Below, in pieces: positions 15,159-45,967 of a stretch of DNA of 64,000 nt. Under the pieces are notes generated by a model. That model did no database searches, was not told the origin of the DNA, and saw nothing but the letters and a program-made list of their open reading frames with translations. The DNA is taken from positions 1-64,000 of the IMG/VR virus record IMGVR_UViG_3300042350_004191. One strand, given 5' to 3'. Made by a program: the position numbers and the translations under genes. Positions within the stretch are counted from its first letter, which is position 1. Every line of letters starts with the position of its first letter.

Positions 15159-15187
15159 ATAGTAGTCTGGATTACTTGTAAACACAA
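15159..15187 (-). promoter_or_regulatory. Boxed early-type promoter
   Basis: TTGTGT-ttacaagtaatccagac-TACTAT; ATG 10 nt downstream. Confidence 0.75.
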
Positions 15188-15280
15188 GCACAAATGTAGG
15201 ACAATCTGGGAGGGTAAGAGAGGCAAGGGGATGACAGCACCAGCACCGGAGGAGCATCGAGGTATGGCGCATCGAGGAGA

Positions 15281-15316
15281 AAAAGAAAACCCCTGTCACC
15301 TTTCGATGACAGGGGT
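15281..15316 (-). terminator. Rho-independent terminator
   Basis: ACCCCTGTCA/TGACAGGGGT stem plus A-tract. Confidence 0.8.
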
Positions 15317-15336
15317 GGATGCCACACGCCGCTCTA

Positions 15337-15852
15337 TCAGAAACCATCGTTGTATGGTTCGTAAGGTTCGTTCAGACCTGATGCCAGCCATTCGGTGACA
15401 GTGTTCCGGTCTTCGAGGATGATGTCACTGGCGACCCAGTAGTTGAGGATATCCTCAGTGAGGGTGGAGGGGTTGTAGCCTCTCTGGTAGAACCTACCAT
15501 TGACAAAGGTGCAGAAGGCGGCGGTGCAATCGACATCCCTCTCGATGAGTTCGTACCTCTCGATGGTCTGACCGAAGGATGCACCCTTGGTGCCAGTGAA
15601 GGTGATCTTCCGAGTGTAGAAGTTGCTGTGATCATCTTCATCAAAGAAGTTCTCAGGCAGTAGGCAGCAGTCCATCTTGTGTTCCCTACAGAGGTAGCCT
15701 TCGAGTTCGGTGCAGTGAAGGTCACAGATGATTTTCGCATCGGTGATGGACGGGTATTGATCGTCCTTGGTATCCGCGATGTGCTTGGGAGCAGTCGTGG
15801 TGTTGAGGTAACGGTGTTTGATGATGTTGATGAGTTCGGTGAGTGTGTCCAT
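15337..15852 (-). CDS. Early hypothetical protein
   Basis: Start re-called at MDTLTELINII, 10 nt after the -10 box. Confidence 0.7.
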   Translation of the reverse strand: MDTLTELINIIKHRYLNTTTAPKHIADTKDDQYPSITDAKIICDLHCTELEGYLCREHKMDCCLLPENFFDEDDHSNFYTRKITFTGTKGASFGQTIERYELIERDVDCTAAFCTFVNGRFYQRGYNPSTLTEDILNYWVASDIILEDRNTVTEWLASGLNEPYEPYNDGF

Positions 15853-15862
15853 AACGTGTAAG

Positions 15863-15891
15863 AGACTACTATGGATTACTTGTAAGGTCGA
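15863..15891 (-). promoter_or_regulatory. Boxed early-type promoter
   Basis: TCGACC-ttacaagtaatccatag-TAGTCT. Confidence 0.75.
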
Positions 15892-15977
15892 GCTAAAAAT
15901 GAATTCCTTTTTAATTGCCAGCACCCTGTGTCATTGAGGCAAGGCGACACAGGGTGCTGTTGTAACTCAGTGCTGCA

Positions 15978-16190
15978 TTACAGAACAGGTAGGTCTTCGA
16001 CTTCGTTGACGGTGATGAGGTAGTGCTTCCTCGTTCCATCATTGTTGAACCATGTGGCTTGCACCACATTGTCCTTGTGCAGTCTGATGTAGGGAGTGCG
16101 ATAACCTCTCTCTCCCTCATCCAAACCCCTCACTACTTTAGTGATGACAACTTCGAGGTCTTCTAGGTCCTTGATGTCTTTAGTCTTCAT
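15978..16190 (-). CDS. Early hypothetical protein
   Basis: ORF, ATGA-coupled to the upstream ORF; hairpin at 15919-15958 follows. Confidence 0.6.
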   Translation of the reverse strand: MKTKDIKDLEDLEVVITKVVRGLDEGERGYRTPYIRLHKDNVVQATWFNNDGTRKHYLITVNEVEDLPVL

Positions 16191-16459
16191 TGATGGTATT
16201 GTCCGGTGGTCAGACGCTGGAGAGACTCAGCCCAATCGTAGTGGGGCATCCATTCTCCATCGCTGAAGTCGATGTAGTGCCTGTCATGCGACAGCTTGTA
16301 GGTGATTCCTTTTGCCTTGCATTCCTTTCGGAACTGGAGGTAGTCAGGATCTGTCTTCTTCCTCGCTGGCTTCGAGCCGTATTCGAGGAGTCGATTGAGA
16401 TTGCGCTGGAGCATCCAGAGACTCATTTGAATTCCTCCGGTATCTCGACCTTCTCCCAT
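16187..16459 (-). CDS. Early hypothetical protein (true start probably MSLWML)
   Basis: ORF in operon. Confidence 0.55.
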   Translation of the reverse strand: MGEGRDTGGIQMSLWMLQRNLNRLLEYGSKPARKKTDPDYLQFRKECKAKGITYKLSHDRHYIDFSDGEWMPHYDWAESLQRLTTGQYHQ

Positions 16460-16821
16460 TCGCCGTAGGCAATCGAGGAGCCGTAGTTATCGACAAACGG
16501 TTTGAGTCTGTCGCCAGCTTTGTAGCCTGTCATGGTGTAGCCCATGCGAGCCAGTGCTTCGAGCTTCTCGTCGGTGAGAAGGTCTGCATCGGTCTGGACG
16601 TTCATGCTCACGTTGACCTTGAAGGGGATTCTCTTTGGTGAGTAGAGAGCCTTGCCAGTGCGTTTGAGCTTTCCGTTCCTGAGAGCCTTGGCATTACGCA
16701 AAGCCTCACCGATTGTTTCGCCACAGCCCCAATTGAATTCATTGGTCTTGGCGATGTAGTAGACTGTCTGTTTACTGGACATAAACGAGTGTGCCTTGTC
16801 TGACTTCGAGTTGAGAAGCAA
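16423..16821 (-). CDS. Early hypothetical protein (true start probably MSSKQTV)
   Basis: ORF in operon. Confidence 0.6.
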   Translation of the reverse strand: MLLNSKSDKAHSFMSSKQTVYYIAKTNEFNWGCGETIGEALRNAKALRNGKLKRTGKALYSPKRIPFKVNVSMNVQTDADLLTDEKLEALARMGYTMTGYKAGDRLKPFVDNYGSSIAYGEWEKVEIPEEFK

Positions 16822-16991
16822 CCTGCTTTTATGTGGTTACAGGTTGGGCGATGAATTGACCAGCGAAAGCACCAGCAACGCCGCCACATTACCCTTTTCT
16901 TCTCGTCTGTGAAAGTCAGCTTATAGGCTATGTTCTCCTACTGATGTTTTGTGTGGTGTTCTCAGTACATCTCGTACTTTGAACGAGAACC

Positions 16992-17019
16992 ACTGTAGCA
17001 GGATTATTTGTAAACGCGA
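16992..17019 (-). promoter_or_regulatory. Boxed early-type promoter
   Basis: TCGCGT-ttacaaataatcctgc-TACAGT. Confidence 0.6.
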
Positions 17020-17276
17020 GAAAATAAAATTCAATTGGAAAGATTTTTTTCTTTACATTTGGAAATCAAACAGTCGTTTAAGTTGGAAATTAAATTGTAA
17101 GACAATTAGAATTTTCTTGACTGACAAAGAAATTTTTAGTAGTCAAAATTTTTTGAAATAGAACAAGTAATCCGAAAATGTCAAGACTAAAATGATTGTC
17201 TTACGTTGTAAGTATTTGTGCCAGCCCGAATTAGAAACAAGACGTTGATTGTAAGACAAAGAGAAAGGCTGGACAC

Positions 17277-17305
17277 AAAGAAGGACGGGAGCAATCCCGT
17301 CCTTC
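17277..17305 (-). terminator. Terminator hairpin
   Basis: GAAGGACGGGA-GCAA-TCCCGTCCTTC perfect stem. Confidence 0.75.
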
Positions 17306-17530
17306 AAGTTTTAGAATGTAAGACGATTAGTTAGGGCTGTTGAGCATCTGGAGCTTCTGGTCTTTGAGACTGACCATATTATCTGCAAGGATGTTCAGTT
17401 TCGCCTCATGCTCTCGCAAGTGCTGGAGGAGGATGGAGATTGCGGATTTGGCTAATTCCATTTCCTCTTGGAGTCTTTCGATTTGTGTCATGGTGAAAGT
17501 GGGGAGAGGGTTTCCCCTCTCCCCATGATT

Positions 17531-18106
17531 TTAGTCGTGGAGTTGGATCAGATTCCCCTTCACTTTGATGCCAGCCATTTGCTCTGGCGTGAAGATGAAT
17601 TCGCGGAACCTCTCACGCTTGAAGCCGCACACCTTTTTGATGTGTTTCTTCGCCAGCGTCAGAGGACGCGAGTTAACGGGTTTCTTTGGATTGGTCGGAG
17701 GAGCGATTTGTTCCTTCTGTTCCCGAAACCCATACAGATGAATCGTTCCGCTTTCCTTGTGGAGCTTGATTCCATCCGAGATAATCTCGTAGGTATCCTC
17801 TCCGTTGTTTTTGTTTTGAGCCGCATGAACGTAGCTCCCAGAGACACCATTGGTGAGCGTTTGCGTCAGCGAGGCGAGCAATTCCGCTTTCGCTTTGGCT
17901 TCCAGATCGTTTTGCGGTTGGTATGCTTCCAGAGCAGCTTTGTCATGCTCACAGGCAGCTTTGTTGCTGATACCAAAGTTAAGCGTGTAGCGAGCCGTCT
18001 CGCCAGTGTCTTTGGTAACGTAGAGGAAGGAGATGAACGTGCAACCCTTCTTTGTGGCTTCCTCCAGAATTTCCAGAGGACTTTGTGTGTTGGTGTTATT
18101 TCTCAT
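17531..18106 (-). CDS. Early hypothetical protein
   Basis: 191-aa ORF with its own promoter and a downstream hairpin at 17501-17524. Confidence 0.75.
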   Translation of the reverse strand: MRNNTNTQSPLEILEEATKKGCTFISFLYVTKDTGETARYTLNFGISNKAACEHDKAALEAYQPQNDLEAKAKAELLASLTQTLTNGVSGSYVHAAQNKNNGEDTYEIISDGIKLHKESGTIHLYGFREQKEQIAPPTNPKKPVNSRPLTLAKKHIKKVCGFKRERFREFIFTPEQMAGIKVKGNLIQLHD

Positions 18107-18116
18107 AACAGGAAGG

Positions 18117-18145
18117 AGTATCGCATGGATTACTTGTAAGGTCGA
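18117..18145 (-). promoter_or_regulatory. Boxed early-type promoter
   Basis: TCGACC-ttacaagtaatccatgc-GATACT-ccttcctgtt-ATG. Confidence 0.75.
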
Positions 18146-18380
18146 GAAAATAAATCCGATTGGATTAAAATTTCTGAATGTCTTACAATCAACCTATCCA
18201 CATGGAATTCGATGGGATTGGAATTGTAAGACAATTAGATTTTGATTGTCTTACGATATATAAGTCAAAAAAAATTGTAAGACAATTGAGAACCAGATCG
18301 TAAGACATTCTTCGCCACTCGGTTTTGTCCGTGGGTTTAACCCACTGTCAAGGATCACCGAAAACCTATACGATTTGATT

Positions 18381-18686
18381 TTACTTTTTCGCTTCCATCG
18401 GAAGCTTCACGCAGTTGCAGAATTCCACATCTGCGAGTGCATCTTGCTCTGTCATGCTTCCCTCATCGATCATGTCTGAGTAGATGCAGACAGCAATCTC
18501 ACGGAGAGAAGAGGCTTTCATTTCCCAACCATTCCCCCAGTTGTTTCCATTGTTGGGAAGTTCCATGTCCCTCTTCGCATGAGAGCAAGTGGAAGCATGG
18601 ACACGGAAGGCTCCGTGTCTCCAGCTTGCAGGACCACAGACTTGTACGGACAGTTCTTTCGATTTGGTGATAGTAGGTGTTCTCAT
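18381..18686 (-). CDS. Early small Cys/His-containing protein
   Basis: ORF with its own promoter; HASTCSH...FCNC. Confidence 0.65.
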   Translation of the reverse strand: MRTPTITKSKELSVQVCGPASWRHGAFRVHASTCSHAKRDMELPNNGNNWGNGWEMKASSLREIAVCIYSDMIDEGSMTEQDALADVEFCNCVKLPMEAKK

Positions 18687-18696
18687 AACAGGAAAG

Positions 18697-18725
18697 AGTG
18701 TCGCACAAATTACTTGTAAGGTCGA
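18697..18725 (-). promoter_or_regulatory. Boxed early-type promoter
   Basis: TCGACC-ttacaagtaatttgtgc-GACACT-ctttcctgtt-ATG. Confidence 0.75.
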
Positions 18726-19064
18726 GAATAAAAACCGATTGGATTTAAGTTTCCAATTGTCCTACAATCGCTGAAAATTTTTGCCCTATATATGTAAGAC
18801 AATTAGATTTTGATTGTCTTACGAATTATTGGCTGTCTGAAAACCGTTGTTACCTGACACTATGATGCAACGTAACACGATGTTGAATTGTAAGACAATT
18901 AGATTTCCGAGCAAAGAAGAACCCCAAGGATTTCTCCTTGGGGTTTTGAGCTATTTGTTTTCTTCGTTTAGCTTCGCAACCTCATCGAGCCATGCTTCGT
19001 ATTCGGAAGCAAACTCATCGCTCTGCATGATGGTATTGAAGTCATCGGTGACTGGATTCATAAG

Positions 19065-19286
19065 CTATTCACCCCAATGGGAGATCCTGCAACGCATCAG
19101 ATAGCAAGTCTCATCGTGCCAGAAGTTACAGACAAAAACGCAGTTAGGGATAGGACCAATAGCTTCACTGCTGCGATCAATGAAGAGTCCCTGTTGCCAG
19201 CATTCATTACGAATGCCCCGATCTTTCCACCGAAGCGGAATGTATTGACTCCACCAAACTGAGTCGGTTGTGGTTTTAGTGCTCAT
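19065..19286 (-). CDS. Early hypothetical Trp/Cys-rich protein
   Basis: ORF with its own promoter; terminator hairpin at ~18914-18946. Confidence 0.6.
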   Translation of the reverse strand: MSTKTTTDSVWWSQYIPLRWKDRGIRNECWQQGLFIDRSSEAIGPIPNCVFVCNFWHDETCYLMRCRISHWGE

Positions 19287-19296
19287 AACAGGAATG

Positions 19297-19325
19297 AAAC
19301 TACTACGGATTACTTGTCAGCACAA
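19297..19325 (-). promoter_or_regulatory. Boxed early-type promoter
   Basis: TTGTGC-tgacaagtaatccgtag-TAGTTT-cattcctgtt-ATG. Confidence 0.7.
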
Positions 19326-19435
19326 GAAAAAAAACCAATTGGATTCAAATACCCGATTGTAAGACAATTAGAATATTATTGACAAAAGCAAAAAACCCCC
19401 ACCTTTCGGTGAGGGTCTTTTGTGATTCTTATCCC

Positions 19436-20482
19436 TTACTTGGTAGCGAGGATTGCTTCACGCCCAAGCTGCAAGATCTCTTTGCGACGAGCATCATTCG
19501 AGAGCATCGCAACAAACGCTTGCTTATGTTCAGCAGCACTACCCATCGCAGAGCGATAGAGGCGGCTACCTTGGGAGTTAGTGCGTCCAGTGCCATTGCC
19601 ATGAGTCCAAAACTCTGTTGCACCATTGGCAAGGTCATACAGGGTTTCGCCAGTGTTCCCGATACCACGCGCAAAGAGCAACGTGATTTCGTTTGCTGCA
19701 TTCACTGCGCGAGTCGAGAGTTCGACAGTGCCAGTGGTTTTGGCAAAGTATCCCATAGCCATTGCAAGGGCTTCGTTATTGTCAACCCTGCAAGAGGAGA
19801 GATACTCCATGACTTCGACCAGATTGGCGCGACCTTTGAGGATAGCGTTAACCAAGTCTCCGAGGTTTTCCATGGCGAGCTTCGCGTTCTTGGTATGGTA
19901 AACCTTGAAGCTAACATCACCCATTGCTTCCATCGACCAACGCAAGGTGTTCATGCAGATGATTCGGATGATCGAATCATAAACATTCATTGCAATGGTG
20001 CCATCATGGGAAGTGACAAAGTTCAAGTGGGCTTTGAATTTCTCTTTTCCACGCTTGTTGACTTTGACTTCCAGATCCGACCCATTCAGTGCAACACTGA
20101 TGGCGAATTTCTTCCCACGCTCCAGCGAGCAGATCGAGGAGATTTTGGCTCCCAAATCTTTGATCGCAGCTTCGAGGGTGTTCCAAACCTCTTCGTTTGA
20201 GATAGGCGTATAGCCAGCCTTGGGAATGTGCAGAGGCACAATCTGATCTACAACGTCGAGGTCATCGCGGCATTCGCGGTGATCCGCGAGCAGCACTTTA
20301 TACTTGTCCAAGGTGATCTGGCGACCATCCAAGTAGACAAGTGCAGGGGATTCAGCGACCTTGAAGAAGTGCTTTTTGGCAACCTCTCTGTCGATCACTT
20401 GACGGTGATTCGCCATCGTATGCCACTCAGTGCCTTCGATGGAGTCTACCATATCATGCGGTAATACTATTCCATGACTCAT
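19436..20482 (-). CDS. DUF932 (phage/plasmid-like, TIGR03299-type) protein
   Basis: SLERGKKF, TSHDGT, IRIICMNTL and HTKN motifs; terminator at 19390-19418. Confidence 0.8.
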   Translation of the reverse strand: MSHGIVLPHDMVDSIEGTEWHTMANHRQVIDREVAKKHFFKVAESPALVYLDGRQITLDKYKVLLADHRECRDDLDVVDQIVPLHIPKAGYTPISNEEVWNTLEAAIKDLGAKISSICSLERGKKFAISVALNGSDLEVKVNKRGKEKFKAHLNFVTSHDGTIAMNVYDSIIRIICMNTLRWSMEAMGDVSFKVYHTKNAKLAMENLGDLVNAILKGRANLVEVMEYLSSCRVDNNEALAMAMGYFAKTTGTVELSTRAVNAANEITLLFARGIGNTGETLYDLANGATEFWTHGNGTGRTNSQGSRLYRSAMGSAAEHKQAFVAMLSNDARRKEILQLGREAILATK

Positions 20483-20548
20483 ATATTTTGTGTCTTTCTT
20501 TTGTGTTTTGGTTAGTTAGCTGAATACTTCTTGCATTCAACTGTCCCT

Positions 20549-20577
20549 ATCCTAATTGAGATTACTTGTAAGTGCAA
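20549..20577 (-). promoter_or_regulatory. Boxed early-type promoter
   Basis: TTGCAC-ttacaagtaatctcaat-TAGGAT. Confidence 0.75.
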
Positions 20578-20882
20578 GTTTTATTTTCATTCTTTTTTAA
20601 TTAAATCCAATTGTCTTACAAATCGAGGTCAGTCTGTTTGTCTTACAAAGTGTTGACAATCAACAACATCCATCCGATTGTCTTACGATCTATTCACCTG
20701 TGAAAAAGGGAGGAAGATTTCTCCTCCTCCCTTTACCACTACACCACACACAAAACTTTATGAAGGCATATCCCAACCTTCATCGTATGCTTCTTTCCAT
20801 GCACGATAGTAATTGTATGCTGCCCATCCAATCACTGACAATGCACCAACAAGCACACCGAGGATAAATGAAATGAAAATAC

Positions 20883-21203
20883 TCATTCGGAAACTTCCAA
20901 TTTGGTTGGTTCGTAGTATTGATGTTGAGGCGCATCATACCATTCTTCTGTGGAGACTTCACCTTTGACCAGATCATATGTGATGTTGTCTCCGTAGTTG
21001 CTACCATCACCAGCACCCGAATAGGAATAGACTTCCCATGCCCAGTCTTCAATCTCTTGGGCGAAGTTGTTATTTTGTTCTGGTGCTAATCCAACGTGCA
21101 AATATCCTTCGTCACTTCCACCAGAAAACTCAAGGACGATTTGTTCGACTCCAAGTTTCTTGGCTTTGTTGTAGATTTTTTTAGATAGAGGTTGTGCTTC
21201 CAT
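20883..21203 (-). CDS. DUF6878-like protein
   Basis: VLEFSGGSDEG and GAGDG..YG.I motifs. Confidence 0.6.
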   Translation of the reverse strand: MEAQPLSKKIYNKAKKLGVEQIVLEFSGGSDEGYLHVGLAPEQNNNFAQEIEDWAWEVYSYSGAGDGSNYGDNITYDLVKGEVSTEEWYDAPQHQYYEPTKLEVSE

Positions 21204-21204
21204 G

Positions 21205-21588
21205 TTATTTGATTTCTAATTTGGTTGTTTGGGTTTTCTTGCCGACAGTCATCATCCACTTTGGAGGATTGTTAGTCAGCATGAAAAGGTAATCCTTTGG
21301 AGTCGGAATGAATCCGCAGTCTTCTTGGATATGTTGCTCCGCGAGCATCTTGGTAGGAATCTCCTGTCCATTGCTATTAGTGATAGCATGACCAAACTCT
21401 TTGATTGCCCATTGGATACCAGCAGAATGATGACGCAGTGCGCGATGAGTCCAATCTCCTGTGAAGGCTTTTGTTTCATCGAACCAGTCATGGAGTTCGA
21501 CGTAATCCATCGGATCGCCACCCCATTTAGAGGCTGATGATTGTGCGTGTTTGTAAGGTGTCATAGGATTTCGATTAGTTGTTTCCAA
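21205..21588 (-). CDS. DUF6915-like protein
   Basis: PYKHAQSSASKWGG, HDWFDETK, HRALRHH and EQHIQEDCG motifs. Confidence 0.7.
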   Translation of the reverse strand: METTNRNPMTPYKHAQSSASKWGGDPMDYVELHDWFDETKAFTGDWTHRALRHHSAGIQWAIKEFGHAITNSNGQEIPTKMLAEQHIQEDCGFIPTPKDYLFMLTNNPPKWMMTVGKKTQTTKLEIK

Positions 21589-21720
21589 GACCTTCTCGCA
21601 TTTTGAAATGATCTTCCATGTATCTTAATGCTTTTTCTTCATCAAAATTATAAGTCTCCATGACATACTGGACAGCCTCTTCAAAAGTCAATTCAGTATC
21701 GGGGTTGTTCCATTCTTTTT

Positions 21721-22305
21721 TCATTTGCTGTAAGACTTCCAGATTTCCAAATCCATGTCAGCAATATTCTTTCCTGCTTTTTCGCATTCGGAAATAAAAT
21801 CCAATTCAATTTTCCGATACTTCTTCTTGTTGGAAGGAGTTGCTTTCGGGACATTGTATCCCTTCTCTGACATATACTTGAGGATGTGTGTATCCAAGAC
21901 AGCAACCTTCATGTCTGGACGAGAGTGCAGGACAAAGAACCGAGATGTCTTGGGTCCGATTCCCTCTACGGATTCCAGTTCTTGGCAACTGACAGTATGA
22001 AGTCTTCCTTCAAACTGGAGAATGCCACGGAAAGCTTTTTCAATCCGATTGTATTGTCCGAGCTTGTAGTGCTTCAAACGTCCCACCAAGGTTCCAGAGT
22101 CAACCATAGCATCGTTATAGTTGACGAGGTAGCGCAACCATTTGAAAGGAGAAACCCCAATGACTCTGGATGTCCACAAAAACTGATTGAGTTTTTCTGC
22201 CTGTGTCTTTGCCGTCTTACCAGCAACGAGGATGGCAAACATGAGAAACTCTTCGAGTTCTTCTTGGGTTCGATTGTAGTTAGTGATGTCTGTTGGTGTT
22301 ATCAT
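21721..22305 (-). CDS. HhH DNA glycosylase, Ogg-like
   Basis: VEGIGPKTSRFF HhH; AVLDTHILK; DLEIW C-terminus. Confidence 0.75.
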   Translation of the reverse strand: MITPTDITNYNRTQEELEEFLMFAILVAGKTAKTQAEKLNQFLWTSRVIGVSPFKWLRYLVNYNDAMVDSGTLVGRLKHYKLGQYNRIEKAFRGILQFEGRLHTVSCQELESVEGIGPKTSRFFVLHSRPDMKVAVLDTHILKYMSEKGYNVPKATPSNKKKYRKIELDFISECEKAGKNIADMDLEIWKSYSK

Positions 22306-22315
22306 GGTGGTAGTG

Positions 22316-22343
22316 GTTGTATCAGATTAGTTGTAAAGGTCAA
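22316..22343 (-). promoter_or_regulatory. Boxed early-type promoter
   Basis: TTGACC-tttacaactaatctga-TACAAC. Confidence 0.6.
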
Positions 22344-22351
22344 GATTTATT

Positions 22352-22546
22352 TCAAACACAGTATGCTTCGAGTGCATCGAGTTTTTTGGCACAGATGAGA
22401 ACAAGCATTGCTTGAGTAATCTTTACTCCACACTTTGCTGTGTAACTCATAGGGATGTTGGGAAACTCTGGAGTGGAAACAGTCTCTCCGTCGAATACCA
22501 CAGGGAAAGCATCTCCTGCAATGTTTATCCAAATTGTTTTTTTCAT
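22352..22546 (-). CDS. Hypothetical protein
   Basis: ORF in operon. Confidence 0.5.
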   Translation of the reverse strand: MKKTIWINIAGDAFPVVFDGETVSTPEFPNIPMSYTAKCGVKITQAMLVLICAKKLDALEAYCV

Positions 22547-22774
22547 TTAGATTTTCTCCTTCACACGGATGAGTTCGTCTGCTGTGCGATAGGTGACTTT
22601 GGTGAGTTGCAACAAAGGTGCTTGGTCAACCTCGCCACCAGAAAGAATCTTCGTGATGCGATAGTCAACGCCATTGCTGATGACAGTATCACCCAATTCC
22701 AATTCGTTTCCTTCTTGGTCAAGGACAAATGGTTTACAATCTTCGTCGGATAGGTAGTAGTTGGTTTTTTTCAT
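22547..22774 (-). CDS. Hypothetical protein
   Basis: ORF in operon. Confidence 0.55.
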   Translation of the reverse strand: MKKTNYYLSDEDCKPFVLDQEGNELELGDTVISNGVDYRITKILSGGEVDQAPLLQLTKVTYRTADELIRVKEKI

Positions 22775-23010
22775 GGAAGGTCTTTATAGAATTTTAGAAC
22801 GCCTCGGTCAATAAGATTTTGCACTTCTCCACATTCAATCTTTCCACGCTCACCATCGGAATCAATGAACCACACGTTCCCATTTGGTGCTTCACTGGAC
22901 AGAAGAAGAACAGAGCCTTCTCTATGGTTTTTGTAAATCTGTGGATTGGGGTTATGAACATTGCTGTCGTATCCCAATTGAATTGGTTTTTGGACGATAT
23001 AGGATTTCAT
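22771..23010 (-). CDS. Hypothetical protein (start re-called at MKSYIVQ)
   Basis: The longer ORF call overlaps tRNA-Cys. Confidence 0.55.
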   Translation of the reverse strand: MKSYIVQKPIQLGYDSNVHNPNPQIYKNHREGSVLLLSSEAPNGNVWFIDSDGERGKIECGEVQNLIDRGVLKFYKDLP

Positions 23011-23027
23011 TTGGTTTTTAGTGGTTA

Positions 23028-23099
23028 AGCATCGTGTTGGATTTGAACCAACGTATAAGAGTTTTGCAGACTCTCGCCTTACCACTTGGCTAACGATGC
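23028..23099 (-). tRNA. tRNA-Cys(GCA)
   Basis: GCATCGT/ACGATGC acceptor stem, U73, anticodon arm AGAGT-CTGCAAA-ACTCT. Confidence 0.92.
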
Positions 23100-23114
23100 G
23101 TCAATGTGGCGAGC

Positions 23115-23143
23115 ATCATGCCCAAAATTACTTGTAAGGTCAA
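23115..23143 (-). promoter_or_regulatory. Boxed early-type promoter (drives tRNA-Cys)
   Basis: TTGACC-ttacaagtaattttggg-CATGAT. Confidence 0.75.
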
Positions 23144-23441
23144 ATCTTTTTTTAGGGGTCTGAGAGAATTCTCTGATTGTAAGACAATTAGATTTTCCTT
23201 GACTAAGAATTTATTTCTGATATTATCTATAACCTTTTGATTGTAAGACAATTAGATCTGATTGTCTTACATGTCGGCGTTCAACGACATTCAGGAATGT
23301 TGCCTAATGCCGACATCGGTATCACAAATTGTGATTTCAAAAACGTTTGCAAACAGACATGTATTATGTGTCTGTCTGCAAACAAAACAAAGAGGGTCGA
23401 GCCTTTCGACCCGACCCTCTTACCACTACTACCACCAAAAA

Positions 23442-23690: not shown

Positions 23691-23694
23691 GGTG

Positions 23695-23946: not shown

Positions 23947-23963
23947 TTTAGCACAGTGTTGTA

Positions 23964-24601: not shown

Positions 24602-24602
24602 A

Positions 24603-37389: not shown

Positions 37390-37395
37390 ATATTT

Positions 37396-38178: not shown

Positions 38179-38225
38179 GCAGGGGTCAAGTTACACGGAA
38201 TTACCTGTAATGTCAACCACTATCT

Positions 38226-38768
38226 TCAGACTATTTGAAAGTGTCGAACATCATTTGGATCGTCAGACTTGACCCCGAAAATATTTGCGAGATAAAAACC
38301 ACCTTTCTTATTCTCGACATAAACTGGTTTAGGGATATTTAAATGAATTAAAAGCTTTTTGAGAAGGTCAACTCGATCTGAATTGAAACCAAATCCATCA
38401 GAATCAATAAATGATTTCCAGAAAGAAACATATGATACATCCATCTCACTTGTCTTACCTAATATGATACCCAGACTATCAACATCAATATTCTCGAAAG
38501 CTGATCCACCTTTACCAAAAACAAACAGACCATCCCCTTCTATTCCTTTTCTTTCTCTGACTTTTCTTAATAGATAAGAATGAGAAGGCATTGTCTCATC
38601 TTCCAGATGAGCATAAAATATCGTTTTGTTATCTTCATCAAATGCGAACAAGTATGCTTTTTCGGAAAAGAAATCTCTTGGGTATTGCCTACCATCCAAA
38701 CCAATAATCTTGTCTGGATTTTCTTTTAATAAAAATTCTTTTTCGTATAAAAATTTTACAAAATTCAT
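38226..38768 (-). CDS. Hypothetical late protein (start re-called, MNFVKFLYEKEFLLKE)
   Basis: TAAGTA just upstream of ATG 38768; the longer call runs through a terminator. Confidence 0.65.
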   Translation of the reverse strand: MNFVKFLYEKEFLLKENPDKIIGLDGRQYPRDFFSEKAYLFAFDEDNKTIFYAHLEDETMPSHSYLLRKVRERKGIEGDGLFVFGKGGSAFENIDVDSLGIILGKTSEMDVSYVSFWKSFIDSDGFGFNSDRVDLLKKLLIHLNIPKPVYVENKKGGFYLANIFGVKSDDPNDVRHFQIV

Positions 38769-42478: not shown

Positions 42479-42516
42479 AAAACAAGTATGGCTATTTTTA
42501 CTTGTATTGTCAAACC

Positions 42517-43797
42517 TTATTTAAGTAATTCTTTGATAAAAGCAGCAGCCCATTTCTGAGCTTCGCCTGTGTTAGCGGCTCCACGGATATTCCCATCAAT
42601 AAAATTCATAACAGGCTTCATTTGTTCATCGGATATACTGCTTAATTTTTCAGCAGCTTTCGCGTATTGTTCAGGACTTAAATCTAGATTTTTAGCAGCA
42701 TTAACAAATGCTGGTGAGGGTCCATTAGACCAGTCACCCTGACCATTAATTCCTTTTTCAAATAAAGCTGAATCAAATTTGTTTTTAGCTACATCAAGTG
42801 GAGATTCTGGATTAAATGGTGTTTCATGGTATCTTTCGAAATAAGAATCAGGATTTAACCCTGCATCTACGGGTTGATCGATCAACTCAGCACTGGGTTC
42901 ATTAGCTGTCAGTCCCATCTCACTTTCTAGACCATTAATATATTTGGAAAGATAATCAATACTAACCCCTAATATAGGTGCAGCTACAGCAAGAATAGCT
43001 GCTTGTTTAGCGACTTTCTTTGGATCAGGTCTTTCTCCATTTAAAACATCTGTTGCTGCTTTTCTTAATGCACCAGCAGTTGCAGCTTTTAACATTGTTG
43101 CAGGAATACCAGCTATGCCAGCAATTGATGCTAATGCTCCACCAGCAGCAGCACCTAAAGCCAATAATGGTGCAGCCTTACCAACGAACTCTACTCCTCT
43201 TCCAATCGAATGTCTAATATCACTTAATTTAGATTCTGTTGGTTTAATTGAATACTCTGATTCTAATTTTGCGATCATTCCATCAATTTGTTTTTTTACC
43301 GAATCATCAGCACCGGAAGTTGTTCCTAAGTCCCTCTGAAGTTCTTTTAGGTGTGAACCAACTTTCTTTTGGAATATCTCAAATCTTTTGTTCACTCTTT
43401 GTGATTGAACATTGCTTTCTCCTGTGGGTGTTTTTTCTCCCATAGCAAATCTTTTCCATCCAGAAACATTAGAAGCAATTCTAGAACCTAATTTTTCCTC
43501 AACATAAGACTCTTCTTTGATTTCTTCTTGTGAAAAAGACTGTTCTATTTCTTTTTGGTCAGTAAAATCTTTAGGAGATTTTTTAATTTCGTCAAAAAAT
43601 TTATTGATTAACTCTCTATATTTTTCTTGTGCAAGTAATTCAGCCTCTAAATTTTCTATGGCCTTTTTTAATTCGTCTACATTATCTTCTATTTTTTGTT
43701 CGAGATCTGTAGGTAAACTATTTTCAACTTCCTCTTTTAAAAGAACTCGTTTAAAATAAATTTCTTGTAATGATTTAAATTCTTCTGTCTTGTTCAT
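42517..43797 (-). CDS. Probable internal/ejected virion protein with hydrophobic Ala/Gly segments
   Basis: Leader variant EEFKSLQEIY..VLLKE; APLLALGAAAGGALASIAGIAG segment. Confidence 0.6.
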   Translation of the reverse strand: MNKTEEFKSLQEIYFKRVLLKEEVENSLPTDLEQKIEDNVDELKKAIENLEAELLAQEKYRELINKFFDEIKKSPKDFTDQKEIEQSFSQEEIKEESYVEEKLGSRIASNVSGWKRFAMGEKTPTGESNVQSQRVNKRFEIFQKKVGSHLKELQRDLGTTSGADDSVKKQIDGMIAKLESEYSIKPTESKLSDIRHSIGRGVEFVGKAAPLLALGAAAGGALASIAGIAGIPATMLKAATAGALRKAATDVLNGERPDPKKVAKQAAILAVAAPILGVSIDYLSKYINGLESEMGLTANEPSAELIDQPVDAGLNPDSYFERYHETPFNPESPLDVAKNKFDSALFEKGINGQGDWSNGPSPAFVNAAKNLDLSPEQYAKAAEKLSSISDEQMKPVMNFIDGNIRGAANTGEAQKWAAAFIKELLK

Positions 43798-44831
43798 AAT
43801 AAATTACATTCTTTCAAAAATTCATTAAAGGGATTATATGATTCGTTTTTATATGAATACCTTGTTTTAGTTGGCCCGACTTTAGTTTCTGTTCTTGTCA
43901 CTCCAGATGGTTTTTTAGTTGTTTTAACTGGGGCGTTTTTTTGTTTAGACCATTTTTGGTTTAGTGTTTCTATCAAATTAGGATTTTTAATTATTTCTGC
44001 TTTTTTTGTTTTTCCTTTTTTACTGGATAAAACTACCCAATTTTTACCATCATACACATATTTGAAAATACCATGTTCAACAGTATCATTTTTCTTTGGG
44101 GATTCTATTGCTGTTTTTGATGTACCTCTTACAGGTGTAATTTCACCTTTAGGTTTTTTTGGTTGTTCTTGTGTTTTTTGTTGTGGAACTTCTTCAGTTT
44201 TTTGTTGAGTTGGTTCTGGTGTTTTATTTGAGTTATCTAAATCTTCTTTTCTAAATAAAGGTTTGCCGCTTACAATAGTAGATTTGATCTTACCTGTTGC
44301 TGCTTTATTCTGTAATTCTGTTTCAGATATTTTTAAATAATCTGCTGCACCTTTTATATCAAGATAACCTTGTACATTAGTTGTTGGTTTGGAAGTTTCT
44401 GGTGTCGGTTCACTAGTTGGTTCTGGTTGTGAAGTTGTTTTTACTTCCGGTGTGGTTGTTGAAGTTTGTGTGGGATTAGTTAAAAATTTCTCAAGATTTT
44501 CTATTTCTTTTAATCTTTGTGCTATAATTGGAAAATCTTTTTGAAGCGTATCGGGATTGGGATCTACTTTAAAAAGTTTCAAATCATTTTTGAAATCAGC
44601 AATTTCTTGTTGGACTTTCTGAACAAAGGATTTTAGTAAGGAACCTTGTTGGGCTTTTGCGTACTCTGTTCTTGCACTTGGACGATCAGCCGTATCGCCT
44701 GTAAGCTTTCCTCCAATATTTTTCATCAGTGTACCAGCACCTTGTTTGATACCAGCACCCTGACCTTTTAATCTGTCCCAAATCCCCTCTTGGTATAATT
44801 GTTCCAAGAGCAAATCATCATTATTTCTCAT
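43794..44831 (-). CDS. Leader-bearing protein with internal excisionase/MerR-type HTH
   Basis: MRNNDDLLLEQLYQE; YLDIKGAADYLKISETELQNKAATGKI..LFRKEDLD. Confidence 0.7.
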   Translation of the reverse strand: MRNNDDLLLEQLYQEGIWDRLKGQGAGIKQGAGTLMKNIGGKLTGDTADRPSARTEYAKAQQGSLLKSFVQKVQQEIADFKNDLKLFKVDPNPDTLQKDFPIIAQRLKEIENLEKFLTNPTQTSTTTPEVKTTSQPEPTSEPTPETSKPTTNVQGYLDIKGAADYLKISETELQNKAATGKIKSTIVSGKPLFRKEDLDNSNKTPEPTQQKTEEVPQQKTQEQPKKPKGEITPVRGTSKTAIESPKKNDTVEHGIFKYVYDGKNWVVLSSKKGKTKKAEIIKNPNLIETLNQKWSKQKNAPVKTTKKPSGVTRTETKVGPTKTRYSYKNESYNPFNEFLKECNLL

Positions 44832-44878
44832 ACTTATGTATTAATACTTATACATAAGTAAGAGTAAAAATGTAATTT

Positions 44879-45106
44879 TTAGTTGTCGATTCTATACAGA
44901 GCCAGAGAATCTCTCCGATAGGGGGGATAATCAGGATATCTGGGAATTACTCTGTAATGTGCAGACTCAACAGGAGGATAACCTGATGGTGTTACATACG
45001 TTTGACCATTGCCGTTGTTAGTTGAGTAAGATCTGGTCGTATGATATGCACAGCCAGAAGACAGCACACAACCTACGGTTAGCACAATATGGAATATGTT
45101 TTTCAT
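44879..45106 (-). CDS. Small lipoprotein under a boxed early-type promoter
   Basis: Lipobox SSGC; promoter at 45115-45143, TTGACC-ttacaagtaattcccta-TAGTCT. Confidence 0.65.
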   Translation of the reverse strand: MKNIFHIVLTVGCVLSSGCAYHTTRSYSTNNGNGQTYVTPSGYPPVESAHYRVIPRYPDYPPYRRDSLALYRIDN

Positions 45107-45139
45107 ACTCCACCAGACTATAGGGAATTACTTGTAAGG

Positions 45140-45967
45140 TCAAGAAATTTTTATATCACCAGTGTAGTTTTCTGGTTCTTTAATTCCTGTAGGACCTTTT
45201 TTCTCTATTAAATCATTTAAAAAATACCACCTTGGGTATAAAGTTCCTTGTCCAACTTGGATAAGTCCTGTTGGTTTTCCTCTGTTATTATCTAGTCTAA
45301 AGGCTTTTCCTAACTTAATATCTGGAGCATTTTCTGTTTTTGTAATTTTGAATTTGTGCAAATAAGTTGAATTATCAGTTTCAAAAATAAACCAAGTTGC
45401 ATACTGTAAGTCTGGATAAATTTCTTCATTGATAATTTGGCTTTGATAATTTATTATATTATCGAAAGATTCATTATTTGGTCTTGGGTCTGTTAATTGT
45501 ACCCAAAATGTTCCAGTCTGTGAAATAATTCTTTTAACATCAATATCATTTTTTTTATTTTCGTCCTGATTTACTATCTGATTTAATTGGTTATTAAACA
45601 AATTTAAAAGAGGATTTTGTTGAATATCTACAATTTCACCTACAAGACCTTCAAGGGTTCCAACTTTTTCCATTATTACTGCTGTAGGGGAAAATATTCT
45701 GGCTGTTGAAGTTTCTTTTGTTGTTGTTGAAGTGCTTTGCGGCGTTTTGCTTTCTTGTAAAGCTTTATTAGCCATATCGCTTGTTACAAATTTCAATTCA
45801 AACTTTTTCTGTTCTAAATTTTTTGGAAGCTGAGTTTTTACATCTTTATTATTTTGAAATTTTTTCATGAAATCTGGAAGTCTTGTTAGATTAAAATTGT
45901 ATGCTCCTTTTGCTGCATCGAAAATATCTCCAAGAGCTTCTTGAATTACTGAATCGAATTTATTCAT
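45140..45967 (-). CDS. Hypothetical late protein (MNKFDSVIQE N-terminus)
   Basis: TAAATA upstream. Confidence 0.65.
   Translation of the reverse strand: MNKFDSVIQEALGDIFDAAKGAYNFNLTRLPDFMKKFQNNKDVKTQLPKNLEQKKFELKFVTSDMANKALQESKTPQSTSTTTKETSTARIFSPTAVIMEKVGTLEGLVGEIVDIQQNPLLNLFNNQLNQIVNQDENKKNDIDVKRIISQTGTFWVQLTDPRPNNESFDNIINYQSQIINEEIYPDLQYATWFIFETDNSTYLHKFKITKTENAPDIKLGKAFRLDNNRGKPTGLIQVGQGTLYPRWYFLNDLIEKKGPTGIKEPENYTGDIKIS

What the first reader, a model, noticed from the sequence alone, without database searches (positions are those of the whole stretch)
15159..45143. Eighteen sigma70-like promoters with a conserved TTACAAGTAATC spacer box and near-leaderless starts
Seen on the minus strand at 15159, 15863, 16992, 18117, 18697, 19297, 20549, 22316, 23115, 24921, 25957, 27576, 29555, 32332, 33412, 38188, 42485 and 45115. 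The layout is -35 (TTGACC/TCGACC/TTGTGY), then TTACAAGTAATC or a close variant, then a variable -10, with 16-17 nt spacing. The spacer is better conserved than the hexamers. In many cases the ATG lies 9-10 nt after the -10 in a GTTATG context (TTCCTGTTATGAG three times), implying ~3-nt leaders with no Shine-Dalgarno. Known: T4 middle promoters use a MotA box at -30. Inference: an analogous but different phage-specific promoter class, controlled by a factor binding -29 to -18.
Basis: partly seen in the sequence, partly recalled or inferred. Interest (0 to 1): 0.65.

Follow-up and report, generated by a model that had tools for sequence, protein, structure and literature searches.

The report
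Boxed leaderless early promoters, T4-like phage
An uncultured 210-kb T4-like lake phage drives its block of small early genes from about 19 host-type promoters that share an unusually conserved 12-base box between the -35 and -10 elements and start transcription only about 3 bases before the start codon; this looks like a new variant of the promoter-terminator cassettes known from T4-type phages.

Summary
The window is the first 64 kb of a 210,586-bp, ~99% complete, uncultured lake-water T4-like myovirus. It encodes rIIA/rIIB and gp43-, gp32-, gp41- and gp55-like genes, but no detectable MotA, AsiA or RNA polymerase.

The 18 sites, plus one more at 29621-29639, are sigma70-type promoters. T1 and G3 of the -35 are 18/18, A2 of the -10 is 18/18 and T6 is 16/18, with 16-17 nt spacing. 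All carry TTACAAGTAATC at about -29 to -18. Box copies are 82% identical pairwise, against 30-34% in the flanks, and this does not depend on flank similarity.

An ATG that opens a real ORF lies 9-10 nt after the -10 in 12 of 18 sites. However, near-leaderless starts and the absence of Shine-Dalgarno sequences are genome-wide, so they are not special to the box.

The promoters sit in terminator / palindrome / promoter cassettes between ORFan genes in a GC-rich early region. A co-occurring strain has a different cassette content there. This matches the PeSL cassettes of T4-type phages, except that there is no SD and the spacer is conserved.

Sigma70-type promoters of the replication genes lack the box, so the box marks a class. 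It is probably a regulator site, more likely for a repressor than for a MotA-like activator. This is unproven and no factor was found.

The parts
15159..15187 (-). Box promoter (-35 TTGTGT, exact box, -10 TACTAT); ATG of a 77-aa ORF at 15148
15863..15891 (-). Box promoter (TCGACC, exact box, TAGTCT); ATG of a 171-aa ORF at 15852
16992..17019 (-). Box promoter (TCGCGT, box with 1 mismatch, TACAGT, spacer 16). No leaderless ORF; transcript would start GTTCAAAG, with a 2-codon ORF at 16970
18117..18145 (-). Box promoter (TCGACC, exact box, GATACT); TTCCTGTTATGAG context; ATG of a 191-aa ORF at 18106
18697..18725 (-). Box promoter (TCGACC, 1 mismatch, GACACT); ATG of a 101-aa ORF at 18686. In a co-occurring strain the box becomes the consensus while the -10 region is replaced
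19297..19325 (-). Box promoter (TTGTGC, 1 mismatch, TAGTTT); ATG of a 73-aa ORF at 19286
20549..20577 (-). Box promoter (TTGCAC, exact box, TAGGAT). A 6-codon ORF starts at 20536; the DUF932 gene starts at 20482
22316..22343 (-). Box promoter (TTGACC + 1 nt, 1 mismatch, TACAAC, spacer 16). ATG of a 194-aa ORF at 22305, whose residue 1 aligns to position 1 of phrog_11575
23115..23143 (-). Box promoter (TTGACC, 1 mismatch, CATGAT) driving tRNA-Cys (23028-23099); the predicted start is about 8 nt before the tRNA
24921..24949 (-). Promoter with a degenerate box (TTACAGATAAAA); ATG of a 102-aa ORF at 24911
25957..25985 (-). Promoter with a degenerate box (TTACAAACAAAA); ATG of a 111-aa ORF at 25947
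27576..27603 (-). Box promoter inside the 3' end of rIIA (TTGACC + 1 nt, 1 mismatch, TAAAGT), upstream of rIIB (start 27464)
29555..29583 (-). Box promoter (TCGACA, exact box, CATACT). A 7-codon ORF at 29542-29519 is followed by a CA-rich leader and the rIIA ATG at 29499
29621..29639 (-).
32332..32359 (-). Box promoter (TTGACC + 1 nt, exact box, TACAAA, spacer 16); ATG of a 48-aa ORF at 32322
33412..33440 (-). Box promoter (TTGACA, 1 mismatch, TAATCT); ATG of a 75-aa ORF at 33401
38188..38216 (-). Box promoter (TTGACA, 2 mismatches, TAACTT); ATG of a 260-aa RecA/KaiC-like ATPase at 38178. It heads the 38.2-34.2 kb operon
42485..42513 (-). Promoter with a degenerate box (ATACAAGTAAAA); a GTG start 6 nt after the -10 opens a 170-aa metallopeptidase-like ORF
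45115..45143 (-). Box promoter outside the GC-rich region (TTGACC, 1 mismatch, TAGTCT). ATG of a 75-aa lipoprotein-like ORF at 45106; its signal peptide with an LSSGC lipobox supports this start
17095..33677 (.). Palindromic element ATTGT-CTT-ACAAT. The core TGTCTTACA has 21 copies, all within 17-34 kb, in both orientations and mostly intergenic upstream of box promoters. Clusters lie at 17095-17259, 18178-18285, 18757-18898, 19357-19367, 20611-20688, 23177-23272, 26007-26017, 29650-29660 and 33473-33677
19389..19422 (-). Canonical intrinsic terminator after the DUF932 gene, upstream of the palindrome and promoter 19297. Similar terminators lie at 15289-15316, 17280-17305, 18920-18945, 20709-20727, 23390-23421 and 29677-29707
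14600..38300 (-). GC-rich early region (about 44% GC, GC3 0.48, against 32% and 0.19 elsewhere) holding about 50 minus-strand genes. Almost all are ORFans; the rest are rIIA (27502-29499), rIIB (26526-27464) and 5 tRNAs

Best explanation
These are early promoters of an uncultured freshwater T4-like jumbo phage, read by the host RNA polymerase with its primary (sigma70-family) sigma factor.

Layout. Each promoter has an A/T-rich upstream region, a -35 of the form T(T/C)GAC(C/A), a 16-17 nt spacer and a TAnnnT -10. After a 7-nt pyrimidine-rich discriminator, transcription most likely starts at the G of a conserved YGTT. In two thirds of the sites the ATG follows directly (GTTATG), so the mRNAs are functionally leaderless with a leader of about 3 nt. 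The whole phage is expressed this way. It has no Shine-Dalgarno sequences, and its T4-type late TAAATA promoters also lie 5-8 nt from the ATG.

Context. The promoters are the downstream part of composite cassettes: intrinsic terminator, lineage-specific palindrome, UP region, promoter. These cassettes separate small ORFan genes, rIIA/rIIB and tRNAs in a roughly 24-kb GC-rich early region. They coincide with the end points of gene-cassette replacement between co-occurring strains. They are therefore a PeSL-like system (promoter-early stem-loop cassettes).

The box. The 12-bp box (TTAC-AA-GTAA dyad plus TC, about -29 to -18) is kept by selection rather than by common descent alone, and it marks the ORFan/rII/tRNA promoter class. 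My preferred reading, which is inferred and not shown, is that it binds a lineage-specific DNA-binding protein that controls this class together. With good -35 and -10 elements at optimal spacing, shut-off by a repressor is more likely than activation.

My sub-probabilities:
- sigma70-type early promoters: 0.85
- near-leaderless transcripts: 0.75
- PeSL-like cassettes: 0.7
- box is a trans-factor site: 0.45-0.5
For: Shown by tools:
- Motif excess and strand/region bias.
- The invariant -35 T1/G3 and -10 A2/T6 pattern, with 16-17 nt spacing kept even where the box is shifted by 1 nt.
- One site drives tRNA-Cys from a start about 8 nt before the tRNA.
- ATGs at 9-10 nt open ORFs with independently supported N-termini. 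Residue 1 of the 194-aa ORF aligns to position 1 of phrog_11575, and the 75-aa ORF begins with a lipoprotein signal peptide.
- Relatives' early promoters have a 7-nt C/T-rich discriminator followed by a conserved GTTCAAT. This supports the G as +1.
- No SD genome-wide. TAAATA ends 5-8 nt before the ATG in 26 genes. Ten box-less TTGACN-N17-TAnnnT promoters have the ATG 6-11 nt downstream.
- T4-like identity and dependence on host polymerase: rIIA/B, a gp43-like polymerase, and gp32-, gp41- and gp55-like proteins are present. No MotA, AsiA, T7-like or multisubunit RNAP was found.
- Cassette architecture: terminators and palindromes lie upstream of the promoters. The same order is seen upstream of rIIA in relative L040.
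- Almost none of about 40 ORFs scanned in the region match Pfam.
- Strain-level cassette replacement, with contig breaks at the repeats.
- Box selection: identity 0.82 against 0.30-0.34 in the flanks, r = 0.16 with flank similarity, and 0.81 in the 110 pairs with random-level flanks. The box is retained inside the rIIA coding sequence (27585-27596) and outside the GC-rich region (45126-45137). In the strain variant of promoter 18697 the box moves to the consensus while the -10 region is replaced. L040 has box-like spacers, TTACAATAAATC and TTACAAATAATA.
- Class marking: box-less sigma70-type promoters head the gp41-like, gp32-like and denV-like genes.
Against: - There are no RNA data of any kind, only DNA runs from lake metagenomes. 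TSS, timing and activity are all inferred.
- The host is unknown, so 'sigma70-type' rests on consensus only.
- No DNA-binding protein was identified. Pfam found none among about 40 proteins of the region.
- The sites were picked by the box, which inflates its relative conservation.
- In relative L040 the right half of the dyad is not kept (GT becomes TA), which weakens the dimer-operator reading.
- A relative at 60% rIIA identity (L035) has TTGACA promoters with unconserved AT-rich spacers. The box is therefore young and could be the signature of one cassette family that spread recently.
- The generic promoter scan of the region is only modestly above shuffles (56 against 37 +/- 6).
Confidence: 0.6

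Rival explanations
1. The box has no function of its own. It is the signature of one promoter cassette family (PeSL-like) that spread recently by duplication and recombination and is kept uniform by gene conversion. At most, the shared roughly 20 bp (-35 plus box) serve as homology for cassette shuffling.
For: PeSLs are repeated, well-conserved promoter/terminator cassettes that mediate indels in T4-type phages (PMC2839356, PMC4122927). Extended repeats of 60-90 nt link promoters 18117, 18697 and 19297 (families D2-D6). Strain variants break at the repeats. The box is absent at 57-60% rIIA identity. The exact 16-mer is not found in a TTGACC context anywhere else in IMG/VR.
Against: Conservation drops from 83-100% to random within one base at the box's 3' edge, although the -10 lies only 5 nt away. 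Box identity is independent of flank identity. The box persists inside a coding sequence and in promoters with unrelated flanks. Neutral decay or conversion tracts should not spare exactly the 12 positions that sigma70 recognition does not need while the -10 varies freely.
Confidence: 0.28
2. One reading: a phage-specific promoter class that needs a MotA-like activator bound at -29 to -18 (sigma appropriation or similar), making these middle-type rather than early promoters.
For: A conserved element lies near -30 to -18 in a T4-like phage. The -10 hexamers are weak matches to TATAAT apart from A2 and T6, so activation could help. The class is separate from the promoters of the replication genes.
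Against: The -35 element is present and good (T1 and G3 in 18/18), with UP-like A/T tracts and optimal spacing. MotA boxes replace the -35 and have a different sequence (PMC2988021). No MotA or AsiA homologue was found at E <= 1. The genes served (rIIA/B, ORFans, tRNAs) are typical immediate-early cargo.
Confidence: 0.12
3. The box is read directly by the host transcription machinery (sigma region 3/4, the beta' zipper, an alpha-CTD or DNA shape) and simply makes these promoters very strong, like the extra consensus positions of T4 early promoters.
For: T4 early promoters show additional regions of consensus beyond the UP, -35, TGn and -10 elements (PMC2988021). Some box-less promoters elsewhere in the genome have partly box-like spacers, for example TTATAGGTAAAA before the gp41-like gene and CTACCAGTAATT before the denV-like gene.
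Against: Other sigma70-type promoters in the same phage and in relative L035 work with unrelated spacers. I know of no RNA polymerase contact that reads 12 contiguous bases at -29 to -18. The host is unknown, so this cannot be excluded.
Confidence: 0.1
4. The contiguous conserved roughly 19-mer (-35 plus box) is a promoter for a phage-encoded RNA polymerase, with transcription starting near its 3' end and leaders of about 20 nt.
For: Contiguous conserved blocks of 18-20 bp are typical of single-subunit phage RNAP promoters (established knowledge).
Against: No T7-like or multisubunit RNAP domain was detected (the T7-type control rang nowhere, so that one test is weak). A2 and T6 of a -10 hexamer are kept at the right distance in 16-18 of 18 sites. 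A gp55-like late sigma implies use of the host core polymerase.
Confidence: 0.03

Closest known systems
PeSLs (promoter-early stem-loop cassettes) of T4-type phages RB49/phi1, PST/T4 and nt-1/KVP40 (Arbiol et al. 2010, PMC2839356; Comeau et al. 2014, PMC4122927)
   Same: They occur in T4-like genomes as dozens of repeated intergenic cassettes. Each has an AT-rich region, a sigma70-like -35/N17/-10 early promoter and an adjacent lineage-specific stem-loop or terminator. They are concentrated in hyperplastic regions in front of ORFans and lie at indel or replacement end points between close relatives. In RB49/phi1 the spacer is often occupied by a conserved palindromic sequence.
   Different: Here there is no Shine-Dalgarno sequence; the ATG follows the start site by about 3 nt. 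The spacer element is a 12-bp box too short to fold (4-bp arms, 2-nt centre) and is more conserved than the hexamers. The repeated palindrome (ATTGT-CTT-ACAAT) is thermodynamically weak and separate from true GC-rich terminators. The host lineage is unknown and the phage shares only about 30% gp43 identity with known T4-likes. Mini-circle formation and promoter activity are untested.
T4 early promoters (UP/-35/TGn/-10 promoters with additional consensus positions; Hinton 2010, PMC2988021)
   Same: They are host sigma70-dependent and very good matches with UP elements. Extra conserved positions outside the hexamers are acknowledged. They serve rII and small early genes, and internal promoters for rIIB lie in the end of rIIA.
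   Different: There is no TGn extended -10 here, and the -10 is only TAnnnT. The extra conservation is one solid 12-bp dyad block. The transcripts are leaderless.
T4 middle promoters / MotA box with AsiA (sigma appropriation)
   Same: A phage-class-specific element lies around -30 in a T4-like phage, combined with a sigma70-type -10.
   Different: The MotA box replaces the -35, whereas here the -35 is intact and the box lies downstream of it. The sequences are unrelated. No MotA or AsiA gene was found.
Leaderless genes recognised in silico by a TAnnnT signal about 10 nt upstream of the start codon (Zheng et al. 2011, PMC3160421; Deinococcus, PMC4007540; mycobacteria, PMC4633059); lambda cI from PRM (from my own knowledge)
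   Same: A -10-like element lies at a fixed short distance from the AUG, there is no SD, and the 5' coding regions are A/C-rich.
   Different: Here it is the general expression mode of a T4-like phage, for both early (sigma70-type) and late (gp55-type TAAATA) promoters. My three literature searches found no description of this for a T4-like phage; phiKZ, for example, has no leaderless transcript (PMC8244752).

Membership tests
sigma70-type (primary sigma) bacterial promoter | -35 hexamer resembling TTGACA | tested here: met
   T1 18/18, G3 18/18, A4 13/18, C5 14/18
sigma70-type (primary sigma) bacterial promoter | -10 hexamer TAnnnT with conserved A at position 2 and T at position 6, 16-18 nt from the -35 | tested here: met
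   A2 18/18, T6 16/18; spacer 17 in 13 sites and 16 in 4; spacing kept where the box is shifted by 1 nt
sigma70-type (primary sigma) bacterial promoter | Mapped transcription start 6-8 nt after the -10, dependent on host holoenzyme | not testable with these tools
   No RNA runs hold this sequence. Indirect support comes from the conserved YG at +1, the GTTCAAT start in relatives and the position of tRNA-Cys
PeSL cassette of T4-type phages | Resides in a T4-like genome | tested here: met
   rIIA/B, gp43-, gp32-, gp41-, gp55-, gp46/47-like proteins, portal and TerL
PeSL cassette of T4-type phages | Repeated sigma70-like early promoter with an AT-rich upstream region and an adjacent stem-loop or terminator | tested here: met
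   However, the repeated palindrome itself folds weakly, from -0.6 to -6 kcal/mol
PeSL cassette of T4-type phages | Concentrated in hyperplastic regions, upstream of ORFans | tested here: met
   All but one of the box promoters lie in 15-45 kb (the box-like exception is at about 182.1 kb). About 40 ORFs were scanned and nearly all lack Pfam matches
PeSL cassette of T4-type phages | Shine-Dalgarno sequence and start codon at the 3' end of the cassette | tested here: not met
   No SD is present; the ATG follows the -10 by 9-10 nt
PeSL cassette of T4-type phages | Located at insertion, deletion or replacement end points between close relatives | tested here: met
   In run X8, one contig replaces about 15.2-17.2 kb with other sequence, with joints at promoter 15159 and at the palindrome/terminator near 17221. 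Contigs break at 18223-18254, 18795-18822 and 19389-19418. This rests on one variant population and on contigs only
PeSL cassette of T4-type phages | Recombination between cassettes (mini-circles) and demonstrated promoter/terminator activity | not testable with these tools
   Needs a cultured phage or cloned cassettes
T4 middle (MotA/AsiA-dependent) promoter | MotA box centred at -30 replacing the -35 element | tested here: not met
   The -35 is intact and the box sequence is unrelated to TGCTT
T4 middle (MotA/AsiA-dependent) promoter | Phage encodes MotA and AsiA | tested here: not met
   PF09114 and PF09010 give no match at E <= 1 in the 99%-complete genome. Very divergent analogues cannot be excluded
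Leaderless mRNA | 5' end at or within a few nt of an AUG start, with no SD | tested here: inconclusive
   The geometry fits in 12-14 of 18 sites and genome-wide, and N-termini are supported. The 5' ends are not mapped
Repressor operator within a promoter spacer | Dyad-symmetric site overlapping RNA polymerase contacts, with a cognate DNA-binding protein | tested here: inconclusive
   The dyad TTAC-AA-GTAA is centred near -24.5. No cognate protein was identified, and the dyad is not kept in L040

The most novel reading that the evidence does not exclude
A distant branch of T4-like phages that lacks MotA and AsiA controls its immediate-early ORFan/rII/tRNA regulon through an unknown, lineage-specific DNA-binding protein. 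This protein would recognise a 12-bp dyad box in the promoter spacer and possibly also the related CTTACAA-containing palindromes upstream. The whole phage, early and late, would be translated from leaderless, SD-free mRNAs. Together these would be a previously undescribed early-gene switch and a previously undescribed expression mode for a T4-like virus.
Probability: 0.35. Interest if true: 0.7.

Novelty: new variant of a known kind. Interest (0 to 1): 0.55.

Why it matters
How T4-like phages without MotA/AsiA (cyanophages, pelagiphages and many environmental lineages) time their early and middle transcription is still poorly understood. This genome offers a cleanly defined cis-element that separates two sets of host-type promoters, so it is a direct handle for finding the factor.

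It also extends PeSL-type promoter/terminator cassettes, so far described in enterobacterial, Vibrio and Aeromonas T4-likes, to a very distant freshwater lineage. Metagenomic evidence suggests they are end points of gene-cassette exchange there too.

Finally, a jumbo phage whose early and late promoters both sit 5-10 nt from the start codon and that has no Shine-Dalgarno sequences is a natural system for studying leaderless translation. It also gives a strong clue about the translation biology of its unknown host.

Tried and rejected
- Hidden tRNA near 18.5 kb. The megablast hits to phage tRNA-Arg genes were in query coordinates, offset by 13,999. They are the annotated tRNA-Arg at 32558-32632. 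Rfam finds nothing at 18.5 kb, and a low-threshold ARAGORN 'intron tRNA' there is spurious.
- Same promoter in other viruses. The 16-mer (GACC plus box) has 23 single hits in IMG/VR. None is preceded by TT/TC and none has extra copies, so this is chance level.
- Relatives found through rIIA. IMG/VR gave 1 locus and the metagenomes gave 6, one of which is the same contig as the IMG/VR locus. Loci at 57-60% identity lack the box. Only L040 (82% over the first 82 residues) has box-like spacers.
- Contigs carrying the identical DUF932 protein are 99.97-100% identical to the window, so they add nothing.
- RNA evidence. No RNA run holds the sequence, so TSS and timing could not be checked.
- Phage RNA polymerase (T7-like, beta, beta'), MotA, AsiA, WhiB and psbA were not found. 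The T7-type search had no positive control.
- Search for a DNA-binding protein. Pfam on about 40 proteins of the early region found none. The only weak HTH hits are in a 356-aa HTH plus metallophosphatase protein at 2726-3796; this is a lead only.
- Palindrome as terminator. Single copies fold at 0 to -6 kcal/mol, and several do not fold at all. Real GC-rich terminators lie beside them. A simple terminator role is therefore not supported.
- Host.
- The generic promoter scan is only weakly enriched, because the -10 boxes match TATAAT poorly apart from A2 and T6.

Full report
**What the sequence is.** The window is the first 64 kb of a single 210,586-bp contig. It is an IMG/VR virus record rated 99% complete, with 32% GC. 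It encodes:
- a portal, a large terminase, collagen-like tail fibres and a T4-family DNA polymerase with about 30% identity to cyanophage gp43;
- rIIA and rIIB;
- gp32-like, gp41-like and denV-like proteins;
- a sigma region-2 protein placed next to a helicase and a gp47-like phosphoesterase, as gp55 is in T4;
- a tmRNA and 14 tRNAs.

Near-identical DNA occurs only in lake and freshwater metagenomes, and no RNA run holds it. It is therefore an uncultured, distant T4-like jumbo phage with an unknown host. No MotA, AsiA, T7-like RNAP or multisubunit RNAP domains were detected.

**Checking the observation.**
- The 12-mer is strongly over-represented: 35 matches at up to 2 mismatches, against 11.2 +/- 3.1 in shuffles.
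- In the whole genome there are 6 exact and 10 one-mismatch copies on the minus strand. Fourteen of them lie in 15-45 kb. The plus strand has none exact.
- After correcting for 1-nt shifts, the -35 reads T(T/C)GAC(C/A), with T1 and G3 invariant.
- The spacer is 17 nt in 13 sites and 16 nt in 4.
- The -10 keeps A2 in 18/18 and T6 in 16/18 while its other positions vary freely. That is the signature of recognition by a primary sigma factor.
- Where 1 nt is inserted between the -35 and the box (22316, 27576, 32332), nucleotides are lost after the box, so the -35 to -10 distance stays at 16 nt.
- An ATG lies 9-10 nt after the -10 in 12 sites and 12 nt after it in 2. In 13 sites a start codon 18-21 nt after the box opens an ORF of 48-260 aa.
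- These starts are credible. The 194-aa protein aligns from its residue 1 to position 1 of phrog_11575. The 75-aa product at 45106 begins with a lipoprotein signal peptide.

One additional promoter-like copy lies at 29621-29639, and a box-like promoter lies near 182.1 kb. Three listed boxes are degenerate (24921, 25957, 42485).

**Where transcription probably starts.** The 7 nt after the -10 are pyrimidine-rich and are followed by a conserved G, as in CCGTTATG, ACGTTATG and CTGTTATG. In relatives found through rIIA, the early promoters show the same geometry: the -10, then 7 nt rich in C/T, then a conserved GTTCAAT that opens a CA-rich leader. Site 16992 in the window also reads GTTCAAAG at that place. 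The promoter at 23115 sits so that this start falls about 8 nt before tRNA-Cys. I therefore infer +1 at the G, giving GUU-AUG mRNAs. This is inference; no 5' ends are available.

**Leaderless starts are genome-wide.**
- Fewer than about 12% of genes have even a 4-nt SD-like word upstream, inside or outside the region.
- Ten further TTGACN-N17-TAnnnT promoters without the box have their ATG 6-11 nt after the -10. They head the gp41-like, gp32-like and denV-like genes, among others.
- The T4-type late element TAAATA ends 5-8 nt before the ATG in 26 genes, with two or fewer at almost every other distance.

The near-leaderless layout is thus the general expression style of this phage and presumably reflects its host. 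This part of the finding is real, but it is not a feature of the box class.

The box promoters lie in a compositionally distinct block at about 14.6-38.3 kb. It has 44% GC against 32% elsewhere, and third-position GC of 0.48 against 0.19. The block holds about 50 minus-strand genes, nearly all without any Pfam match, plus rIIA, rIIB and five tRNAs.

Between the genes the order is: stop codon, GC-rich intrinsic terminator, one to five copies of a palindrome (ATTGT-CTT-ACAAT), an A/T-rich tract, then the promoter. The palindrome core TGTCTTACA occurs 21 times in the genome. All copies lie within 17-34 kb, in both orientations.

Related phages have their own versions:
- TTGT-CAT-ACAA, 23 copies in 12 kb of L038;
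- AAAGGT-CTT-ACCTTT in L040;
- an ATTGT-AAT-ACATT-like element in L036.

Between the window and L040 the central GT-CTT-AC is kept, while two arm positions changed on both sides, which preserves the symmetry.

Upstream of rIIA the two phages have the same layout:
- terminator;
- palindrome;
- two or more promoter copies with a box (TTACAAGTAATC and TTACAAGGAATT here; TTACAAATAATA and TTACAATAAATC in L040);
- CA-rich leader.

**Evidence for cassette exchange.** Contigs from four lake metagenomes were laid on 14601-20600. They break at the repeats (18223-18254, 18795-18822, 19389-19418). In run X8 one 1,875-nt contig matches 14601-15113 in two pieces separated by about 200 nt of other sequence. 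It then carries about 950 nt that are mostly absent from the reference and rejoins at 17221. The reference genes between promoter 15159 and the palindrome/terminator at about 17.2 kb are therefore replaced. In the same run, the promoter at 18697 keeps its box (it becomes the consensus) while the next 14 nt, including the -10, are a different sequence. Loose ends at break points carry the palindrome.

**Comparison with PeSLs.** This is the behaviour described for PeSLs: composite promoter-terminator motifs in the hyperplastic regions of T4-type phages that flank ORFans and mark indels and replacements (PMC2839356, PMC4122927). [quoted passage not shown]

**Is the box more than shared descent?**
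- Pairwise identity among 20 promoters (the 19 in the window plus the box-like copy at about 182.1 kb) is 0.82 in the box, 0.51 in the -35 segment and 0.30-0.34 in the UP, -10, discriminator and downstream segments. Random expectation is 0.26.
- Box identity does not track flank identity (r = 0.16). It is 0.81 in the 110 pairs whose flanks are at random level.
- Conservation ends abruptly at the 3' edge of the box, 5 nt before the -10.
- The box persists within the rIIA coding sequence (27585-27596) and in an AT-rich context outside the GC-rich region (45126-45137).
- It is absent from the sigma70-type promoters of the replication and repair genes and from relatives at 57-60% rIIA identity.

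These points favour selection on the box as a class-specific cis-element. They must be weighed against ascertainment (the sites were picked by the box) and against the youth of the element.

The box is a dyad (TTAC-AA-GTAA) centred near -24.5. With an intact -35, UP-like tracts and optimal spacing, an activator seems unnecessary. A dimeric repressor that shuts off the immediate-early class is the most economical reading. The right half of the dyad is not kept in L040, and no DNA-binding protein was recognised among about 40 proteins of the region. The only weak HTH hits are in the 356-aa protein at 2726-3796. I put the trans-factor reading at about 0.45-0.5, pure descent or homogenisation at about 0.28, a MotA-like activator at about 0.12, direct RNA polymerase contact at about 0.1 and a phage RNAP promoter at about 0.03.

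**What the palindrome does is open.** Single copies fold weakly or not at all, from 0 to -6 kcal/mol. Genuine terminators lie beside them, and the central three bases are conserved. Oppositely oriented neighbours can form 10-bp stems, for example at 18226-18254. It shares CTTACAA with the left part of the box. A protein-binding site, a recombination site or a processing signal all remain possible.

**Verdict.** The closest known system is the PeSL cassette. Five of its defining features were tested and met. One (the SD at the 3' end) was tested and not met. Activity and mini-circles are untestable here. I therefore rate it a new variant of a known kind, with moderate interest. Two things raise the interest: the sharply conserved spacer box, which separates two sets of host-type promoters, and the genome-wide leaderless, SD-free layout in a T4-like phage.

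Noticed in passing
window 14600-38300 against the rest of the 210.6-kb genome: There is a sharp split in codon usage. The early region has third-position GC of 0.48, the rest of the genome 0.19. The phage's tRNAs mostly read A-ending codons (anticodons TGG, TCC, TTC, TAT, TCT, TAA, TTG). This would fit early genes tuned to a higher-GC host tRNA pool and late genes served by phage tRNAs. Alternatively, the early region may have a foreign origin.
   Followed up: partly
whole genome, e.g. window 3843-4484, 7776-8912, 46343-47314: The T4-type late element TAAATA ends 5-8 nt before the ATG in 26 genes, a sharp peak, so late mRNAs also look leaderless. No Shine-Dalgarno signal appears anywhere in the genome.
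   Followed up: yes
window 33685-33778, with an AT-rich tract at 33800-33900: Five direct repeats of CGTTTGAA occur with 21-22 nt periodicity. They lie next to a very AT-rich stretch and five palindrome copies, in a 750-nt non-coding gap at the edge of the GC-rich region. This is an iteron-like array and a candidate replication origin or regulator array.
   Followed up: no
window 17088-17148, 23170-23230, 33466-33526, 33522-33582 (plus strand): A repeated unit on the plus strand consists of the palindrome, a T-run and CTTGAC, and lacks the box. The copy at 23199-23226 is a good TTGACT-N16-TATTAT promoter pointing antisense to the genes. These may be divergent or antisense promoters.
   Followed up: no
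window 29542-29519, 20536-20516, 16970-16962 (minus strand): Where the main gene is not fused to the promoter, a tiny ORF sits in the leaderless position: 7 codons before rIIA, 6 codons before the DUF932 gene and 2 codons at 16970. Each is followed by a CA-rich leader. This may be ribosome loading followed by re-initiation.
   Followed up: no
window 683-1144 (minus strand): The phage encodes a tmRNA (Rfam 143 bits) with a short, unusual tag, ADEEMLLAA.
   Followed up: no
window 39505-40420 (three tandem plus-strand genes); also 12109-12816 and 43794-44831: A paralogous gene family shares an N-terminal motif, MKSKDD..LLEAY, and the 5' ends of the tandem genes are conserved at the DNA level (repeat family D12).
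   Followed up: no
window 2726-3796 (minus strand): A 356-aa protein has weak N-terminal helix-turn-helix hits and a metallophosphatase domain. It is expressed from a box-less TTGACC-N17-TAAATT promoter 8 nt from its ATG. It is the only DNA-binding candidate seen.
   Followed up: partly
L040 4680-4830: The closest relative carries 2.5 tandem copies of a 55-nt unit (palindrome plus TTTACA plus a box-like spacer) in front of its rIIA promoter, so promoter cassettes can amplify in tandem.
   Followed up: partly
L038 5225-5330 and throughout; L037, L039: Relatives at 57% rIIA identity carry more than 20 copies of TTGTCATACAAAAC. Some are in tandem arrays with about 25-nt spacing, which is iteron-like.
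   Followed up: partly
window, first codons after the box promoters (e.g. 15148, 18106, 19286, 22305, 32322): The 5' coding regions are strikingly A/C-rich and G-poor (ACC, AAC and ACA runs). The leaders in relatives are CA repeats (AACCAAACC...). This fits unstructured, SD-independent initiation regions.
   Followed up: no
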